NCBI GenBank assembly: GCA_053919585.1
Contig: CM132811.1
Reading direction: 5' to 3' (one strand)
Length of the DNA stretch: 63,718 nt
Origin: Euprymna scolopes
Lineage: Eukaryota
Positions 11,813-20,903 of the stretch are shown piece by piece. Made by a program: the position numbers and the translations under genes. Below the pieces are notes generated by a model, which was given only the letters and a program-made list of their open reading frames with translations, was not told where the DNA came from and did not search any database. Numbering within the stretch: position 1 is the stretch's first letter; each line of letters starts with the position of its first letter.

Positions 11813-12577
11813 AAATTTATATCATAGACAACGCCATTATTTCCGTATTCTTAATAGGTATCAAAAATATTTAATAGAAGCTTGAACCTTTTAAAATTTG
11901 CGTAAATATCGAGCAGCCATCTTTGTTTAGCCAGTTATTAAGGTGAACAAAAAGGCTGCTTTACTCATAATCTGTATCTATGAAATCTTTAAAAGCTTAT
12001 AAATTCTATTAAATGAAAATAAGTGGATTTTTTTACTAATTTTCAACAGTATTTTCTTTTCAAATGATTTATGTCGGCAATGGTAATATTTACCGACTTT
12101 TTTTTTTTTTTAATTTTTCGTTAAACATTTTAAAAATTAAAAACGTATAGTAAATCAATCAATGATCATATTTTGGAAACGATATTAGATGAGTGTGTAA
12201 GATTTATTAAAACACAAGGCCGATAGCCATTCGTCGTGTGCTCTCGTGTAATGAATGAATGTGTGAATGTAGGATTGACATGAAATTCTTAAAGATAAAC
12301 TAAAATGACCGAAAAATGGGCTGAAATGACTTAAATAAATAAAAAGTAAATGACTTAGAATGACTTTAATGAACTTAAGGATGAATTGAATGACCTTAAG
12401 AATTCTTAAAAAATACCTGGAATCCTTCAAAAACAAATTGAATGATCTGGAGAATGACTTGAATGGCTTTGAGACTGACTGGTTGTAAAGTGCGTGATCA
12501 TTTTACATTAAATTAATAGAGAAAAGTGATCCCCCATTTTATATCACAAAGTTACAAACATAAGTACAGCATGCAGT

Positions 12578-12628
12578 AAGAACAGATACTACACTTTGAT
12601 CTTGGCCAAAAGGCCTAGAAAAGGGTAT
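12578..12628 (-). pseudogene. U2 snRNA 5' fragment at the 3' (left) end of the array
   Basis: Minus strand reads ATACCCTTTTCTAGGCCTTTTGGCCAAGATCAAAGTGTAGTATCTGTTCTT, matching the invertebrate U2 5' end (ATCGCTTCTCGGCCTTTTGGCTAAGATCAAAGTGTAGTATCTGTTCTT). The rest of U2 is absent. Confidence 0.9.
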
Positions 12629-15600
12629 TTATTTGTTCCCCCACGGAGAAAATTAGGCACAAGGCCGATTTTTAAAGTGAGTAGTGAAGGGGAAATGGGG
12701 ACCAACTCCCCGGGGAGTAGGGGGAACTGGATAGTGACAATTGGTATGAATGATTGCCCCTACATTGACCAAGGTCTTATATGTGAGGTTTCCCCTACAT
12801 ATGGTCTTTGCTTGCAGTATCTGCCGGAACAGATACTACGGTATTTATTTGCTCCCCCACCGAGCAAATTAGGCACAAGGCCGATTTTTAATGTGAGGAG
12901 TGAAAGGGAAATGGGGACCAACTCCCCTGGGAGTAGGGGAGCTGGATAGTGACAATTGGTATGAAGGGTTGCCCCTACATTGACCAAGGTCTTATCTGTG
13001 GGGTCGCCCCCACATGGGGTCTTTGCTTGCAGTATCTGCCGGAACAGATGGTATTTATTTGCTCCCCCACCGAGCAAATTAGGCACAAGGCCGATTTTTA
13101 ATGTGAGGAGTGAAGGGAGGGGGAAGGGGAAAAGGGGACCAGCTCCCGAGAGGTGGGAAATGGGAGCTGGTTAAAGGTCAGGCATGTGGGGTTGCCCCCA
13201 CATCTGGTCTTTGCTAGTCATAGCTAGTCATAGCTTGCAGTATCTGCCGGAACAGATGGTATTTATTTGCTCCCCCACCGAGCAAATTAGGCACGAGGCC
13301 AATTTTTAATGTGAGGAGTGAAGGGAGGGGGAAGGGAAAAAGGGGACCAGCTCCCGAGAGGTGGGAAATGGGAGCTGGTTAAAGGTCAGGCATGTGGGGT
13401 TGCCCCCACATCTGGTCTTTGCTAGTCATAGCTAGTCATAGCTTGCAGTATCTGCCGGAACAGATGGTATTTATTTGCTCCCCCACCGAGCAAATTAGGC
13501 ACAAGGCCAATTTTTAATGCGAGGAGTGAAGGGAGGGGGAAGGGAAAAAAGGGACCAGCTCCCGAGAGGTGGGAAATGGGAGCTGGTTAAAGGTCAGACA
13601 TGTGGGGTTGCCCCCACATCTGGTCTTTGCAAGTCATAGCTTGCAGCATCTGCCGGAACAGATGGTATTTATTTGCTCCCCCACCGAGCAAATTAGGCAC
13701 AAGGCCGATTTTTAAAGTGAGGAGTGAAGGGAGGGGGAAGGGAAAATGGGGACCAGCTCCCGAGAGGTGGGAAATGGGAACTGGTTAAAGGTCAGGCATG
13801 TGGGGTTGCCCCCACATCTGGTCTTTGCTAGTCATAGCTAGTCATAGCTAGTCATAGCTTGCAGTATCTGCCGGAACAGATACTACACTTTGATGGTATT
13901 TATTTGCTCCCCCACCGAGCAAATTAGGCACAAGGCCGATTTTTAATGTGAGGAGTGAAGGGAGGGGGAAGGGAAAAAGGGGACTAGCTCCCGAGAGGTG
14001 GGAAATGGGAGCTGGTTAATGGTCAGGCATGTGGGGTTGCCCCCACATCTGGTCTTTGCTAGTCATAGCTTGCAGCATCTGCCGGAACAGATGGTATTTA
14101 TTTGCTCCCCCACCGAGCAAATTAGGCACAAGGCCGATTTTTAATGTGAGGAGTGAAGGGAGGGGGAAGGGAAAATGGGGACCAGCTCCCGAGAGGTGGG
14201 AAATGGGAGCTGGTTAAAGGTCAGGCATGTGGGGTTGCCCCCACATCTGGTCTTTGCTAGTCATAGCTAGTCATAGCTAGTCATAGCTTGCAGTATCTGC
14301 CGGAACAGATGGTATTTATTTGCCCCCCCACCGAGCAAATTAGGCACAAGGCTAATTTTTAATGTGAGGAGTGAAGGGAGGGGGAAGGGAAAAAGGGGAC
14401 CAGCTCCCGAGAGGTGGGAAATGGGAGCTGGTTAAAGGTCAGGCATGTGGGGTTGCCCCCACATCTGGTCTTTGCTAGTCATAGCTAGTTCTAGCTAGTC
14501 ATAGCTTGCAGTATCTGCCGGAACAGATGGTATTTATTTGCTCCCCCACTGAGCAAATTAGGCACAAGGCCGTTTTTAATGTGAGGTAAAAACCAGCTCC
14601 CCTAAAAGTAGGCAAAAAGGGGGCACTCTGGTTACCAAAAATAATAATTGTCCCAGTATAGAGGGTTTCCCCTCCATTGACTGGTACAAATTATCTTAAG
14701 TGCAGCATCTGCCGGAACAGATGGTATTTATTTGCTCCCCCACTGAGCAAATTAGGCACAAGGCCGTTTTTAATGTGAGGTAAAAACCAGCTCCCCTAAA
14801 AGTAGGCAAAAAGGGGGCACTCTGGTTACCAAAAATAATAATTGTCCCAGTATAGAGGGTTTCCCCTCCATTGACTGGTACAAATTATCTTAAGTGCAGC
14901 ATCTGCCGGAACAGATGGTATTTATTTGCTCCCCCACTGAGCAAATTAGGCACAAGGCCGTTTTTAATGTGAGGTAAAAACCAGCTCCCCTAAAAGTAGG
15001 CAAACAGGGGGCACTCTGGTTACCAAAAATAATAATGGTCCCAGTATAGAGGGTTTCCCCTCCATTGACTGGTACAAATTATCTTAAGTGCAGCATCTGC
15101 CGGAACAGATGGTATTTATTTGCTCCCCCACTGAGCAAATTAGGCACAAGGCCGTTTTTAATGTGAGGTAAAAACCAGCTCCCTTAAAAGTAGTCAAAAA
15201 GGGGGCACTCTGGTTACCAAAAATAATAATTGTCCCAGTATAGAGGGTTTCCCCTCCATTGACTGGTACAAATTATCTTAAGTGCAGCATCTGCCGGAAC
15301 AGATGGTATTTATTTGCTCCCCCACTGAGCAAATTAGGCACAAGGCCGTTTTTAATGTGAGGTAAAAACCAGCTCCCCTAAAAGTAGGCAAAAAGGGGGC
15401 ACTCTGGTTACCAAAAATAATAATTGTCCCAGTATAGAGGGTTTCCCCTCCATTGACTGGTACAAATTATCTTAAGTGCAGCATCTGCCGGAACAGATGG
15501 TATTTATTTGCTCCCCCACTGAGCAAATTAGGCACAAGGCCGTTTTTAATGTGAGGTAAAAACCAGCTCCCCTAAAAGTAGGCAAAAAGGGGGCACTCTG

Positions 15601-16324
15601 GTTACCAAAAATAATAATTGTCCCAGTATAGAGGGTTTCCCCTCCATTGACTGGTACAAATTATCTTAAGTGCAGCATCTGCCGGAACAGATGGTATTTA
15701 TTTGCTCCCCCACTGAGCAAATTAGGCACAAGGCCGTTTTTAATGTGAGGTAAAAACCAGCTCCCCTAAAAGTAGGCAAAAAGGGGGCACTCTGGTTACC
15801 AAAAATAATAATTGTCCCAGTATAGAGGGTTTCCCCTCCATTGACTGGTACAAATTATCTTAAGTGCCGCATCTGCCGGAACAGATGGTGTTTATTTGCT
15901 CCCCCACTGAGCAAATTAGGCACAAGGCCGTTTTTAATGTGAGGCAAAAACCAGCTCCCCCAAAAGTAGGCAAAAAGGGGGCACTCTGGTTACCAAAAAT
16001 AATAATTGTCCCAGTATAGAGGGTTTCCCCTCCATTGACCGGTACAAACTATCTTAAGTGCAGCATCTGCCGGAACAGATGGTATTTATTTGCTCCCCCA
16101 CCGAGCAAATTAGGCACAAGGCCAATTTTTAATGTGAGGAGTGAAGGGAGGGGGAAGGGAAAGGGGGCATCAACTCCCGAGAGGTGGGAAATGGGAGCTG
16201 ATTAAAGGTCAGGCATGTGGGGTTGCCCCCACATCTGGTCTTTGCTAGTCATAGCTAGTCATAACTTGCAGTATCTGCCGGAACAGATGCTACACTTTGA
16301 TCCCGGCTCAAAATCCAAGAAAGC
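12625..16324 (-). repeat. Tandem array of 18 U2-snRNA-headed short elements (units ~194-243 bp; order on + strand 2xA, 7xB, 8xC, 1xB)
   Basis: Constant block GTATTTATTTGCTCCCCCACYGAGCAAATTAGGCACAAGGCC...TTTTTAATGTGAGG starts at 12625, 12841, 13051, 13259, 13467, 13665, 13896, 14094, 14312, 14530, 14724, 14918, 15112, 15306, 15500, 15694, 15888, 16082. Each unit ends in GCAGYATCTGCCGGAACAGAT, whose GAACAGAT(ACTACACTTTGATC) is the reverse complement of U2 GATCAAAGTGTAGTATCTGTTC. Confidence 0.93.
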
Positions 16325-16335
16325 TTAAAAAGCTA

Positions 16336-16385
16336 AGAACAGCATCTATTAACAACAGACCTTTGATCTTAACCAAAAAGGCCAA
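16336..16385 (-). pseudogene. Second U2 snRNA 5' fragment just upstream of the array
   Basis: Minus strand GGCCTTTTTGGTTAAGATCAAAG...CTGTTCTT. Confidence 0.75.
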
Positions 16386-17676
16386 ACACAAATGTGTTAC
16401 GGACAGACGACAGACCGACCGACGGAACGACGGAGTGACTTATGGAGCCGCTTGCACGCGACTAATAACTTTCCAAATAAATGAAGAAGTAGAAAACTAA
16501 AGATTCTATTAGAATTTGAAAAGTAAAACTAGGTACACGGGTCAGTGTAATGCTATTAGGCGCAATAGATGGATTAGAACCCCGGGTGTCGACAGCGTTA
16601 TTTAAGATCAAAAGTTTGGTTAGTAATGACAAAGTGAAAACATCCCTCTGTCCATCACGTTAGTATGTTGAACGCATAAGCATCAGAAAGGTTTTATTGT
16701 CTGGAAATTACAAACATTGAAAACAGAACTGACATCAAACGACGTAATGACTTTTAATTAAAAAGTTGATTTTTGGCACCTGAAGATAAGAAAATTGTTA
16801 AACAGATCACCCAGGCGCGAAAAAAACAAACAAACAAACAAACAAACAAACACAAACCCGGCAAATAAACAAACACATCAAGAAGAGAGAAGTTTGAGAG
16901 AAGGTAGACTATTCGGGTATGAAGAGATGTGAAATATTTCTATTTGTGAATCTTTCGCTTTTTTCTGAGAGTTATCATGTGTGGGTCATATACTATAAAA
17001 GATTAAAAAATAACCCCGTAAGCATTGTTGAAGTGCAAATAATGCGCTGTCTTTAGTTTTAACTTCTACAAGTGCTGTTATTCAAAAAATAGCCGACTCC
17101 AGTAAGAATAAAGAGACCAATATAAGTGCAACGCCTGGCATTGCTACGTGTCAGCTATACAACAGGACTCTAGCTTTTAAGACAGGCAGAGAAGCCAAGA
17201 AAGGAGAAGTCTCTTTGAAAGGTGAACTATTCGTGGATGAATAGATGTGCAAAGTTCGAAAGTCTGTTTGTTCATTAGTGAAGGAATTTAACGAAAAACA
17301 AATGTAACAAAAAGATTGCCTTGCTGTCTATTCCAAGGAAAGCAACTCCGATGAGAAACGAAAAATCAAATTATATTACCTCCTTTGAACTTAAAACTTC
17401 ATATATAAAATAGTTTAGTAACGTGTAATTTTTTTTGTTTCCAAGGGTGATACGTATACTGAAAAGGAAGAAGAAAAACAAAAACAAAAACAAACACGCA
17501 AGCATTAATAAACCGCACATGATCACGTGTTGTCTTTATGTATAACTTTTAAGAAGGAAACAACAGGAAACAACAGCAACGAGAAGAACGGGATTAACAT
17601 AATTGTGACGCCAAACTGCTACGTGTCATCTATGCAACATGATTCGAACTACCTCTGTTCAGATGATATACTAGAG

Positions 17677-17677
<1 letters not shown>

Positions 17678-17752
<75 letters not shown>
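17678..17752. repeat. Microsatellites; example (CA)n(CT)n
   Basis: Direct inspection. More than 25 other (AT)n, (AAT)n, (CAT)n 41087-41140, (TATC)n 34202-34256, (CTA)n 62345-62398 and (GA)n tracts occur. Confidence 0.95.
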
Positions 17753-17758
<6 letters not shown>

Positions 17759-18994
17759 AATGTCTCAATGTCCCTCTCTTGCGCATTCGTATTTTGACAC
17801 AATCTCTTACACGTGAATGGCTGATATTATTTTTTATCGCAATTTCTAAATTTAAACACATATATGACTCCAGTTCAAAACATCTGGAAACCCTTTTCTG
17901 TTTTTTTTTCTTTCTACTGCAATGAAATAAATTATTATCACCAGGAAGCATTCGGCTATTGCGTACACAATTTACCTTTTAAATTAAAAACAAATTACAG
18001 AGCAATGAATAAATGGTCAAATATTTGGACGATTAATACGTGACAGTTTTTTAAGATCGAACTCGCAGCGTAATGAGTTTAAGATTGGCTTGGAATAATT
18101 TTTTAGAGCCATACCCAAATAATTTAATTGATTACCCGTGCAGACTATTAAGTTACTTGGTTATAGTAAAGATTGTCTGCTGTTTTAGACTTCTGGTTTC
18201 TGTTCCGCAGACGGGACGACGGTGACAAGCAAGAAATGATCATATAAAAATATGTTAAATGTACAGATATTTTCTCAAATGTAAAAAGTACATTTGTAAG
18301 GGAATTATGTATACATTTTAGTTTTACTGGTAGTTTAAAATCAATAACGTTTATTATTTTATCATTAATATCAGTGATAGAAAATTTTGTTTTAAACAAA
18401 ACGAAATTAAAAAATAAAAAAAGACAATTCAAAGAATCGTTTTTGGCACTAGAAAACAGGCACAAAGTTTTCCGATTTCGATACCGATTGCGATACCCCG
18501 AACAGTTCCGATTTTTTCGATTTCTGATTCCCTGTAATTGTTCCAACACTTGAGATATATCATTTCTTTAACATAGAAATTAATTTCAACTCTATATAAT
18601 GTATTATACTTTTTACGCTAATATTTTCACGACTAATTTCACTAAAAAGAGAATTTATTTATCCGCAAAGCTAGAGATAAACAAAGATCATCACAAAGTG
18701 AAAAATAAAACTAATAAAGAATAGGGGCTTGTGTCTCAAAAGAAGGACCACTTGATACAGGCATCGTTTTAGACCGCTTGACCAACGGGTCAGTACGTTA
18801 AGACGAAGCCGATTCCCGATTCGAATTCTGATTTCAATCCTGTACGAATTTCATTTTTTACTGTGGCGTTCTTTATTTATCCACGGCCCCGCGGATAAAT
18901 AAAGTATATTGTTTACTGAAATAACTCGTAAATTTAAATACATTTTGAATGAACATTTTTAGATAGATATACCTCCATTTCAATTTCTCAGCGC

Positions 18995-19550: not shown

Positions 19551-20685
19551 ACAAAACATGACTACACCACGAGTATTGTTTCAATCTATCAGCGTATTTG
19601 CATACATAGTTTAACATAATAACGGCTAGCATTTGTACGTTCATTATTATGATCTATACTTCTTTCAGATCTTACGTGCTACAGCTTGAGTAAGTGTTCA
19701 TACCAGTCGGGGATACGTCCTCGACAATCAGTTCAACAATGGTTTTGGCGTGTTTCTGTTCAATCCTAGGAAGTCTACCTTCCCAGGCTTTATCTTCTCT
19801 CTGAGAAAAGGGTTATTTTTATTGCTAATCACGTGGAGCAGCTCAACCCAGGAATGTCAACCGGGCTGCTCAGACATTCTTGTAGGATAGAGTGCGCTAA
19901 ACCTAGTGCGCTGGTGTTTTTAAAAACCACACCTGTGTCTAACACGCGTTGGGATGAGGTAAATAAATGTTTTTCTCAGATGAGTTTATTTTTCAACTTT
20001 TTATAATTTTACTTATTAAAACAAATACGCACATTTATTTGTTCGTTATATATCTACGATAACTCCTTTCTTACACACACGCAGTTTAATTATAAACTTA
20101 GATCTGAACACAGACACGCGTGTGCTAACGTGCGCAGCCCCCCTCTCTCTCTCTGTCTTATTTGATGTCTCAATGTCCCTCTCTTGCGCATTCGTACTTT
20201 GACACAATCTTTTACACGTGAATGGCTGATATTATTTTTTATCGCAATTTCTAAATTTAAACACATATATGACTCCAGTTCAAAACTTCCGGAAACCCTT
20301 TTCTTTCTTTCTTTCTTTCTTTCTTTCTCCAACGCAGTAAATTAAAAATAATAATATAAAAATTGCTTCGCAATTTCTCTCGCTTCTGTTTGTATATAGC
20401 CCCCCTCCTGCTTTCTCACCACCGGATGCATTCTTTTTCATTTTATCGGGGTCCTTTCCTATTTTCACTATACTCATTTTGCGATATGCTTTCGTTAAGA
20501 TAATACCAAGTTTGGCTTTTGCTTGTCTTAGGAAGGAACCTAATCTTAGCAAAGTCATATGAGTTAAATAAAGTCTAACTTCACAGAAACACTTATTTTA
20601 AGTCATTGCGAATAATGAAAAGTATTTATTACTAGCTGAAGTACCCGGCGTTGCCAGGTTGTATATGATATATTTGAATATTTTA

Positions 20686-20903
20686 TGCTTCGGGCCAAGA
20701 TCAAAGTGTAGTACCTGTTCTGATGCTACACTTAAGAATATTTGTCTCGGTCGATGGAAGGAAAACCCTCTATACTGAGATAATTATTATTTTTTGTCCC
20801 TACCAGAGTGCCCCTTTTGCCTTCTTTTCGGGGTGCTGGTTTAACCCCACATTAAAAACGACATTGTGTCACATTTTGCTTTTGTGGGGAAGCAAATAAA
20901 AAC
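20686..20903 (+). mobile_element. Dispersed U2-headed element monomer, type C-like
   Basis: CCAAGATCAAAGTGTAGTACCTGTTCTGATGCTACACTTAAG...CCCTCTATACTGAGATAATTATTATTTTT...ACCAGAGTGCCCCTTTTGCC...CACATTAAAAACG...GCAAATAAA is colinear with the reverse complement of array type C units. Confidence 0.88.

What the first reader, a model, noticed from the sequence alone, without database searches (positions are those of the whole stretch)
12625..16324. Modular 18-unit array: constant ends with three interchangeable interiors
Seen: a ~75-80 bp constant junction block alternates with ~115-140 bp interiors of types A, B and C in blocks 2A-7B-8C-1B. The constant block is nearly identical across types while the interiors differ strongly. 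Ordinary satellites homogenise the whole unit. Inference: the array was assembled from distinct subfamily RNAs (serial insertion or RT template jumping) and then locally amplified. It could be transcribed as a multimer and act as a source locus.
Basis: partly seen in the sequence, partly recalled or inferred. Interest (0 to 1): 0.88.

Follow-up and report, generated by a model that had tools for sequence, protein, structure and literature searches.

The report
Stacked U2-headed SINE array
This is a head-to-tail pile of 18 short non-coding jumping elements of three subfamilies, all starting with a piece of U2 spliceosomal RNA and ending in the same tail; they probably piled up by landing in each other's U2 piece, a variant of known elements rather than a new kind of RNA locus.

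Summary
There are 18 units at 12624-16327 in the order 2A-7B-8C-1B. An 81-nt constant block is 93-99% identical between types, while the interiors are 33-49% identical.

The sense strand is the minus strand. Each unit is one retroposon: a U2 snRNA-derived 5' part, a structured body and a 59-nt tail. The "constant junction block" is therefore the tail of one unit joined to the U2-derived start of the next.

- Only the 5'-most unit keeps a full U2 head.
- 15 of 17 internal junctions fall at ...GTGTAGT|ATCTGTTC, within 1 nt of the published Keno/Utopia target in U2.
- Single copies with a U2 head, C-like body and the same tail lie elsewhere in the window. One composite has a filled/empty site pair with a ~17-bp target-site duplication (TSD). 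It also holds a truncated unit inserted into a U2 head between 13-nt duplications.

Best reading: a SINEU-like family stacks by inserting into its own U2-derived head, and the C block was then amplified locally.

The partner LINE is not in this window. Types A and B were not found outside the array here. Multimer transcription is untested, and no ribozyme was found.

Earlier follow-ups of this scan reported the same family and the same stacking on other DNA of this genome. Verdict: a new variant of a known kind, of moderate interest.

The parts
12624..13049 (-). Units u1 and u2 (type A), the 3'-most units in sense orientation. u1 keeps 5 extra U2 nt (GTAGT, 12835-12839) at its 5' end.
   Evidence: 17 substitutions between the two units; u1 differs from the overall constant-block consensus at 6 positions
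13050..14528 (-). Units u3-u9 (type B), with 1-3 copies of a 10-nt repeat (GCTATGACTA on the sense strand). u6 keeps 13 extra U2 nt (ATCAAAGTGTAGT, 13882-13894).
14529..16080 (-). Units u10-u17 (type C), all 194 nt. Four are identical; the others carry only private changes.
16081..16327 (-). Unit u18 (type B), the 5'-most unit and the only one with a full, degenerate U2 head (about 16281-16327).
   Evidence: Rfam U2 26.2 bits, E 0.022, over 16162-16327
16335..16398 (-). Remnant Y: a further decayed U2-like head fragment plus the start of a 5' constant part, directly upstream of u18's head.
   Evidence: read from the sequence; position; inference
12521..12626 (-). U2 snRNA 5' part (about nt 3-48, then diverging) directly after u1's tail. 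It is the head of a further element D.
   Evidence: Rfam U2 52.6 bits, above the gathering score of 46
12201..12520 (-). Body and short tail-like end of element D (ATCGGCCTTGTG...AATAAATC). This assignment is weak.
   Evidence: inference
20680..20903 (+). Dispersed single copy: U2 head, C-like body and the family tail.
   Evidence: 81% identical to C units; nhmmer with the C interior E 1e-22, with the tail E 3e-8
32314..32638 (-). TSD-flanked composite: U2 head, then a 5'-truncated unit X (32521-32586) between two copies of ~13 nt of U2 head, then a C-like unit. The TSD copies lie at 32301-32317 and 32639-32655; the empty paralogous site is at 42380-42396.
4180..4361 (+). Dispersed copy with a U2 head and C-like body, cut off by an N run.
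26100..26412 (+). Family member E with a different body and a longer tail. Its tail is followed by TTCAAAGTGAAG (U2-like) and then a second U2-like head at 26456 onward.
   Evidence: (Rfam U2 28.3 bits at 26456-26614)

Best explanation
The array is a stack of non-autonomous retroposons (SINEs) whose sense strand is the minus strand.

A full element has three parts:
- a head copied from roughly the first 50 nt of U2 snRNA;
- a structured body, which defines subfamilies A, B and C;
- a 59-nt tail with a stem-loop, ending in ...GCAAATAAATACC and without poly(A).

The head contains the U2 site ...GTGTAGT|ATCTGTTC... that U2-targeting LINEs (Keno, Utopia) are known to cut. A new copy therefore lands in the head of a resident copy. 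The resident copy keeps only U2 nt 38 onward, and a single head remains at the 5' end of the stack. That head is retained either because the target's 5' part is deleted or because the new cDNA anneals to the old head.

Repeating this with RNAs of different subfamilies gives a mixed head-to-tail array. DNA-level duplication (unequal exchange) then expanded the C block and probably part of the B block.

The ends stay constant because they carry what retroposition needs: the tail for the reverse transcriptase and the U2 part as landing site. The bodies drift, keeping only their hairpins.

Shown here: unit anatomy, strand, junction positions, dispersed copies, a TSD-flanked insertion, and an insertion inside a head.

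Inferred: the identity of the LINE, the order of events, and how the single head is retained.
For: Strand and anatomy:
- Rfam finds U2 5' parts on the minus strand at both ends of the array (52.6 and 26.2 bits).
- Minus-strand units fold with z-scores of -2.9 to -3.7, against -1.5 for the plus strand, and show GNRA-type loops only in that sense.
- Dispersed copies run head, body, tail.

Junctions:
- 15 of 17 internal junctions are tail|ATCTGTTC, and they include three between different types (u3|u2, u10|u9, u18|u17).
- The other two internal junctions keep 5 or 13 more nt of U2, in register.
- PMC4640811 states that U2 downstream of Utopia starts at nt 39, that Keno uses the same site, that the 5' U2 fragment can be lost on integration, and that tandem Utopia insertions occur in Nasonia.

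Units are whole elements: the diagnostic bases in the 5' constant part and in the tail switch together with the interior, exactly at the tail|ATCTG junction. The exception is GATRCTGCA, where B units u5 and u7 carry the C-type G.

Retroposition:
- There is a filled site and an empty site with a ~17-bp TSD.
- Inside that composite, a 5'-truncated unit sits between two ~13-nt copies of ATCAAAGTGTAGT. This is a TSD inside a U2 head.
- The same 13 nt are left at junction u7|u6.

Local amplification: all C units are 194 nt, 4 of 8 are identical, and the remaining changes are private.

Homology of the interiors: they share a hairpin with 3 pairs changed on both sides, and the A-interior HMM finds C-like copies at E 0.009.
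Against: - No LINE with this tail is in the window, so the partner and its endonuclease type are untested. The only RT remnant (34650-35560) has no matching tail.
- The junction is 1 nt off the published nt 38|39 if the tail ends in ...TACC.
- u1's tail abuts the very start (about nt 3) of the next U2 head, not the canonical site.
- Dispersed copies sit at non-U2 sites, so targeting is a preference and not strict.
- The head-proximal unit u18 is 3.8% from the B consensus, while the C units are 0-1% apart. This does not fit a simple newest-at-the-head order unless the C block was amplified later or u18 came from another source.
- No TSD was found for the whole array.
- A and B were not seen outside the array in this window.
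Confidence: 0.68

Rival explanations
1. One-shot concatemer. During a single retroposition event the reverse transcriptase jumped from the 5' part of one SINE RNA to the 3' end of another, many times over. Alternatively, a multimeric transcript of another array was copied. Either way the mixed array arrived as one insertion.
For: - u1's tail is joined to about nt 3 of the next element's U2 head, as expected for a jump at an RNA 5' end.
- Variable amounts of head are retained at two junctions.
- Earlier notes of this scan mention TSD-flanked multi-unit arrays elsewhere (not tested here).
- Kojima 2015 (PMC4494074) invokes template switching for the addition of heads in SINEU.
Against: - Most junctions lie at one internal position (nt 37|38), not at an RNA end, and that position coincides with a known endonuclease target.
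- The composite at 32314-32638 shows a 13-nt duplication of head sequence around the inserted unit. End-to-end jumping does not produce that.
- No TSD was found around this array.
- Eight near-identical C units in a row fit DNA-level amplification better.
Confidence: 0.14
2. A SINE-derived satellite. A few founder units (A, B, C) lay side by side, and everything else is DNA-level unequal crossing-over. Gene conversion keeps the 81-nt junction block uniform.
For: - The C block is 98-100% identical.
- TRF finds a 429-nt two-unit period in the B block.
- u6/u8 and u5/u7 share derived states.
- U2-derived satellites (U2_sat) are known in Ciona (PMC4640811).
Against: - It does not explain why the founders were joined at the U2 target position, or why the same tail-to-U2 adjacency recurs at independent places (26412, 32521).
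- Diagnostic bases in the constant block stay type-specific, so conversion between types is not evident.
- u6 carries a 13-nt U2 extension that its near-twin u8 lacks.
Confidence: 0.13
3. A retrozyme-like or other self-processing tandem RNA locus, transcribed as a multimer and cut or circularised into unit-length RNAs with a function of their own.
For: The units are structured, the hairpins are conserved across types, and they are repeated in tandem.
Against: - No hammerhead, HDV-like, twister or other ribozyme match lies in 12200-16800 even at E up to 10.
- The family is retroposed with TSDs.
- Every unit carries AATAAA and T5 runs on the sense strand.
Confidence: 0.03

Closest known systems
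SINEU (SINEs with U1/U2 snRNA-derived heads; Kojima 2015, PMC4494074)
   Same: The head is copied from the 5' part of U2 snRNA and the body is not related to snRNA. There are several subfamilies. Further U2 pieces are added recurrently at the 5' end (remnant Y upstream of u18). [quoted passage not shown] T runs of 4 or more argue against Pol III.
   Different: SINEU was reported only from crocodilians and ends in poly(A). These units end in a stem-loop tail ...GCAAATAAATACC without poly(A). SINEU prefers a Mariner transposon as target, whereas here the recurrent target is the family's own U2 head, which gives long mixed stacks.
Keno (Tx1 clade, APE) and Utopia (RLE) U2-targeting LINEs (PMC4640811)
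   Same: The insertion point in U2 is the same to within 1 nt (the downstream flank starts at ATCTGTTC or TCTGTTC). The U2 5' fragment is lost, as in Phytophthora. Tandem insertions occur, as in Nasonia.
   Different: Those are autonomous, protein-coding elements sitting in real U2 genes. Here the units are about 200 nt, non-coding, and carry the target themselves. No such LINE is present in this window.
U2_sat of Ciona (U2 gene-derived satellite used as a target by YURE elements; PMC4640811)
   Same: A tandem repeat carrying U2-derived sequence that attracts U2-type retrotransposons.
   Different: U2_sat is described as a satellite derived from the U2 gene. Here the units are retroposons of several subfamilies, each with a LINE-type tail. 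I did not see its sequence.
Mollusc 'jigsaw' SINEs (Matetovici et al. 2016, PMC4758252)
   Same: Modular SINEs in which heads, core domains and tails combine differently among families.
   Different: Those have tRNA-derived or LINE-promoter heads and simple-repeat ends. U2-headed SINEs are cited there only as the crocodilian case.

Membership tests
SINEU-like SINE | 5' head derived from U1 or U2 snRNA | tested here: met
   Rfam U2 matches at 12521-12626 (52.6 bits), 16162-16327 (26.2), 26456-26614 (28.3) and 4174-4308 (24.5). The 22-nt U2 motif occurs 7 times against 0 expected.
SINEU-like SINE | Short, non-coding, dispersed copies flanked by target-site duplications | tested here: met
   Dispersed copies lie at 20680-20903, 32314-32638 and 4180-4361. 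A filled/empty site pair shows a ~17-bp TSD. ORFs in the array have no relatives.
SINEU-like SINE | 3' poly(A) tail, as stated for all SINEU groups | tested here: not met
   All 18 units and the dispersed copies end in ...AAATAAATAC(C) with no A run.
SINEU-like SINE | Mobilised by a Tx1-type LINE that shares its target preference or its ends | not testable with these tools
   No LINE with this tail is in the window. External DNA scans found nothing. Earlier notes of this scan claim such a LINE elsewhere in the genome; I did not check this.
Keno/Utopia-type U2-site-specific insertion | 3' junction at U2 nt 38|39, so that the downstream flank starts TCTGTTC | tested here: met
   15 of 17 internal junctions are ...TACC|ATCTGTTC, which is within 1 nt. 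Three of them are between different types. The published site is from PMC4640811.
Keno/Utopia-type U2-site-specific insertion | Element encodes RT plus an APE or RLE endonuclease | tested here: not met
   The units are about 200 nt and non-coding. They can only be passengers of such an element.
Satellite DNA | Whole unit homogenised along the array | tested here: not met
   Interiors are 33-49% identical between types. Only the C block behaves like a satellite, at 98-100%.
Retrozyme or ribozyme-bearing tandem repeat | A self-cleaving ribozyme in every unit | tested here: not met
   There is no ribozyme family match in 12200-16800 at E up to 10.
U2 snRNA gene array | Full-length U2 with Sm site and 3' stem-loops | tested here: not met
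   Only U2 positions of about 1-50 are recognisable. The Rfam alignments delete or mis-pair the rest.

The most novel reading that the evidence does not exclude
The family makes its own landing pad. Every insertion brings a fresh U2-derived target, so stacks grow mostly at the head end and would record the order in which subfamilies were active. Arrays may in turn be read as multi-unit RNAs that seed new arrays. In that case a spliceosomal RNA fragment would have been co-opted as a portable integration site for a whole retroposon ecosystem in a mollusc genome, outside the one clade (crocodilians) where U2-headed SINEs are described.
Probability: 0.35. Interest if true: 0.7.

Novelty: new variant of a known kind. 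Interest (0 to 1): 0.5.

Why it matters
It extends snRNA-headed SINEs beyond crocodilians, apparently to a mollusc. It also shows a simple way for a mobile element to build long mixed tandem arrays: it carries the target of its partner LINE. This explains a repeat structure, constant junctions with variable interiors, that otherwise looks like an engineered or CRISPR-like array. If insertion really is polar, the stacks could serve as relative time-lines of subfamily activity. For annotation, such arrays should be masked as stacked SINEs and not reported as satellites, U2 pseudogene clusters or structured-RNA loci.

Tried and rejected
- Rfam in gathering and E-value mode on the array and on the whole window found only U2 5' parts and no ribozyme. 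The retrozyme or circular-RNA reading was dropped.
- Exact-pattern scans for the tail returned 0 hits in viral contigs and 13 in metagenome contigs. All 13 were chance matches without the rest of the tail.
- A protein search with a 117-aa spurious ORF spanning two A units, meant to find other arrays through mis-called genes, returned nothing.
- I looked for the partner LINE in the window. The only RT remnant is at 34650-35560(-), and it has no matching tail. Its relatives' contigs L014 and L015 (40 kb) hold no family member.
- A search for a TSD around the whole array found no shared word of 9 nt or more beyond the U2 motifs themselves.
- The 'cargo inside a Helentron/DINE-1 shell' idea got no support. 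The immediate flanks (11830-12560 and 16330-17700) are not repeated in the window. The left 'shell' reads better as one more U2-headed element, D.
- Mosaic exchange of ends between subfamilies was considered. Array C units have A/B-like ends but interiors like the dispersed C-like copies. Conserved ancestral ends plus derived ends in the dispersed subfamily explain this without recombination, so I make no such claim.
- Organism: the protein atlas and the homology search only hint at Mollusca. One named hit is Nucella lapillus at 52% identity.
Full report
**1. Observation**

A 41-nt probe from the constant block matches 18 times on the + strand between 12624 and 16121, with none expected by chance. 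Cutting at these points gives the following units:
- 216 and 210 nt (type A, u1-u2);
- 208, 208, 198, 231, 198, 218 and 218 nt (type B, u3-u9);
- eight of 194 nt (type C, u10-u17);
- 247 nt (type B, u18).

TRF reports periods of 215, 208/429 and 194. Between types, the 22-nt 5' constant part is 95-99% identical, the 59-nt tail 93-95% and the interior 33-49%. No N run lies in the array.

**2. Strand and anatomy**

Rfam finds the 5' part of U2 snRNA on the minus strand at both ends of the array. The match at 12521-12626 scores 52.6 bits, above the gathering score. The match at 16162-16327 scores 26.2 bits.

Read on the minus strand, every unit has three parts:
- it starts with ATCTGTTC, which continues the U2 sequence ...GATCAAAGTGTAGT, followed by CGGCAGATRCTGCA;
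- then comes the variable body;
- it ends with a 59-nt tail that has a stem-loop (TTTGCTC / GAGCAAA) and the end ...AAATAAATACC.

Only u18, the 5'-most unit, has a full though degenerate U2 head. u1 keeps 5 extra U2 nt (GTAGT) and u6 keeps 13 (ATCAAAGTGTAGT), both in register with U2.

Three bases in this block are type-diagnostic. Those in the tail switch with the interior exactly at the tail|ATCTG junction. The third, GATRCTGCA, does so too, except that B units u5 and u7 carry the C-type G. Each unit is thus one integral element, not an interior slotted between fixed ends.

Minus-strand units fold better than shuffles (z -2.9 to -3.7), while the plus strand gives z -1.5. GNRA-type loops (GAAA, GCAA, GCGA) appear only in the minus sense.

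**3. The interiors are homologous**

An alignment of A, B and C units with two dispersed copies gives a shared hairpin. Three of its eight pairs have changes on both sides that keep the pairing. There is also a second shared long hairpin. An HMM of the A interior finds the dispersed C-like copies at E 0.009.

The types are diverged subfamilies with conserved ends and hairpins, plus type-specific inserts:
- a second hairpin in A;
- a 10-nt repeat and a C-rich tract in B;
- an AT-rich spacer in C.

**4. The family is retroposed and dispersed**

The U2 motif GATCAAAGTGTAGTATCTGTTC occurs at 7 places in the window, with 0 expected. Single copies with a U2 head, a C-like body and the family tail lie at these positions:
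- 20680-20903 (81% identical to C units);
- 32314-32520 (74%);
- 4180-4361 (cut by an N run).

A member with another body lies at 26100-26412.

The flanks of the composite at 32314-32638 match one continuous paralogous stretch at 42349-42512. The ~17-bp sequence at 42380-42396 is present on both sides of the insertion, at 32301-32317 and 32639-32655. This is a filled site and an empty site with a TSD.

Types A and B were not found outside the array in this window.

**5. Junctions point to insertion into the U2 head**

Fifteen of 17 internal junctions read ...TACC|ATCTGTTC. Three of them join units of different types (u3|u2, u10|u9, u18|u17), so the position was used repeatedly.

The Utopia paper (PMC4640811) states the following:
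- U2 downstream of Utopia insertions starts at nucleotide 39, that is TCTGTTC.
- Keno has the identical 3' flank.
- In Phytophthora the U2 1-38 fragment is lost on integration.
- Tandem Utopia insertions occur in Nasonia.

The array junction lies within 1 nt of that site.

There is direct in-window evidence for insertion into a head. In the composite at 32314-32638, a 5'-truncated unit X (32521-32586) lies between ...GGATCAAAGTGAAGT and TCTCAAAGTGTAGT|ATCTGTTC. These are two ~13-nt copies of U2 head sequence. The same 13 nt remain at junction u7|u6, and the tail of the element at 26412 is again followed by TTCAAAGTGAAG. There thus seem to be two preferred cut positions in the head, before ATCAAAG and before ATCTGTT.

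**6. Local amplification**

All C units are 194 nt. u10, u11, u14 and u15 are identical, and the others carry 1-5 private changes with none shared.

B units differ by 2-11 substitutions and by the copy number of the 10-nt repeat. u6/u8 and u5/u7 share derived states, which suggests a two-unit duplication. However, u6 has the 13-nt U2 extension and u8 does not, and this remains unexplained.

u18 is 3.8% from the B consensus and has a decayed head, while the adjacent C units are nearly identical. This fits a late DNA-level expansion of one C unit inside an older stack better than eight separate insertions. A burst from one master copy is not excluded.

**7. What does not fit neatly**

- u1's tail is joined to about nt 3 of a nearly complete U2 head (12626-12580). 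That head leads into a further element D, which has a long body and a short tail-like end near 12201. A jump at an RNA 5' end would explain this junction better than the canonical site does.
- Upstream of u18's head lies another decayed U2 fragment with the start of a unit (16335-16398). It recalls the recurrent head additions described for SINEU-1 (PMC4494074).
- No TSD bounds the whole array.
- The flanks are not repeated in the window.

**8. Mechanism proposed**

A SINEU-like family is mobilised by a LINE that cuts U2 sequence. Because the SINE carries that sequence, new copies land in resident heads and the stack grows. Unequal exchange then amplifies blocks.

The transcript is probably made by Pol II. 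The sense strand has T5 runs in B and C, and an AATAAA 5 nt from the unit end. Read-through into the next ATCTGTTC would give an RNA 3' end able to pair with the nicked target. That last step is my inference.

The partner LINE is not in the window. External scans and a protein search gave no further copies.

**9. Known relatives and novelty**

SINEU (U1/U2-headed SINEs, often in tandem, with recurrent head addition) was described only from crocodilians and has poly(A) tails. Keno and Utopia define the target site. Ciona has a U2-derived satellite that attracts related elements.

Literature searches found no description of U2-headed SINEs in molluscs. The host is probably a mollusc, but here this rests only on hints.

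Earlier follow-ups of this scan reported the same family, the same stacking and a partner LINE on other pieces of this genome. I treat those notes as leads. Their claims about the LINE and about copy numbers were not checked here.

**10. Verdict**

- This is a new variant of a known kind.
- Interest is 0.5.

Noticed in passing
window 24204-24320(-), 31845-31950(-), 1357-1450(+), 49040-49155(-): 5S rRNA-like sequences (Rfam 54, 46.5, 36.8 and 24.8 bits) that are about 75-83% identical to each other. They look like a dispersed 5S-derived repeat family (SINE3-like or pseudogenes) rather than a 5S gene cluster. They do not carry the U2-family tail.
   Followed up: partly
window 15887-16080 (unit u17): All five private differences of u17 from the C consensus are transitions: four A>G and one T>C on the sense strand. 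This could be RNA editing or RT error before an independent insertion, or it could be chance.
   Followed up: no
window 34650-35560(-): Decayed LINE reverse-transcriptase remnant in three ORF pieces (Pfam RVT_1). The nearest relatives are 71-80% identical in unnamed ENA/Logan contigs. One named hit is from the gastropod Nucella lapillus (52%). It is not the partner of the U2 family, because it has no tail match.
   Followed up: partly
window 26100-26620(+): Two U2-like heads share a 5' extension (..GCA(A)TTTTATGGTTCCTT..) beyond U2 nt 1. The first belongs to a family member with a longer tail. The tail is followed by a U2-like TTCAAAGTGAAG and then the second head (Rfam U2 28.3 bits).
   Followed up: partly
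window 10000-10276: 22-bp tandem repeat (TTTTTATACAAGTTTCCAGACT), 12.5 copies, 88% matches.
   Followed up: no
window 11446-11828, with copies at 57927-58280(-), 36551-36889(+) and 47662-47840(-): An unrelated interspersed repeat of about 380 bp (75-77% identity between copies) lies just left of element D.
   Followed up: no
window 27285-27460(-), 50027-50081(+), 35537-35582(-): Weak sub-threshold hammerhead matches (HH9 26 bits; type III 24.7 and 24.6 bits) and a weak SCARNA7 match.
   Followed up: no
window 17738-17915 and 20143-20320: A 178-bp direct duplicate at 95% identity next to the AC/CT microsatellite.
   Followed up: no
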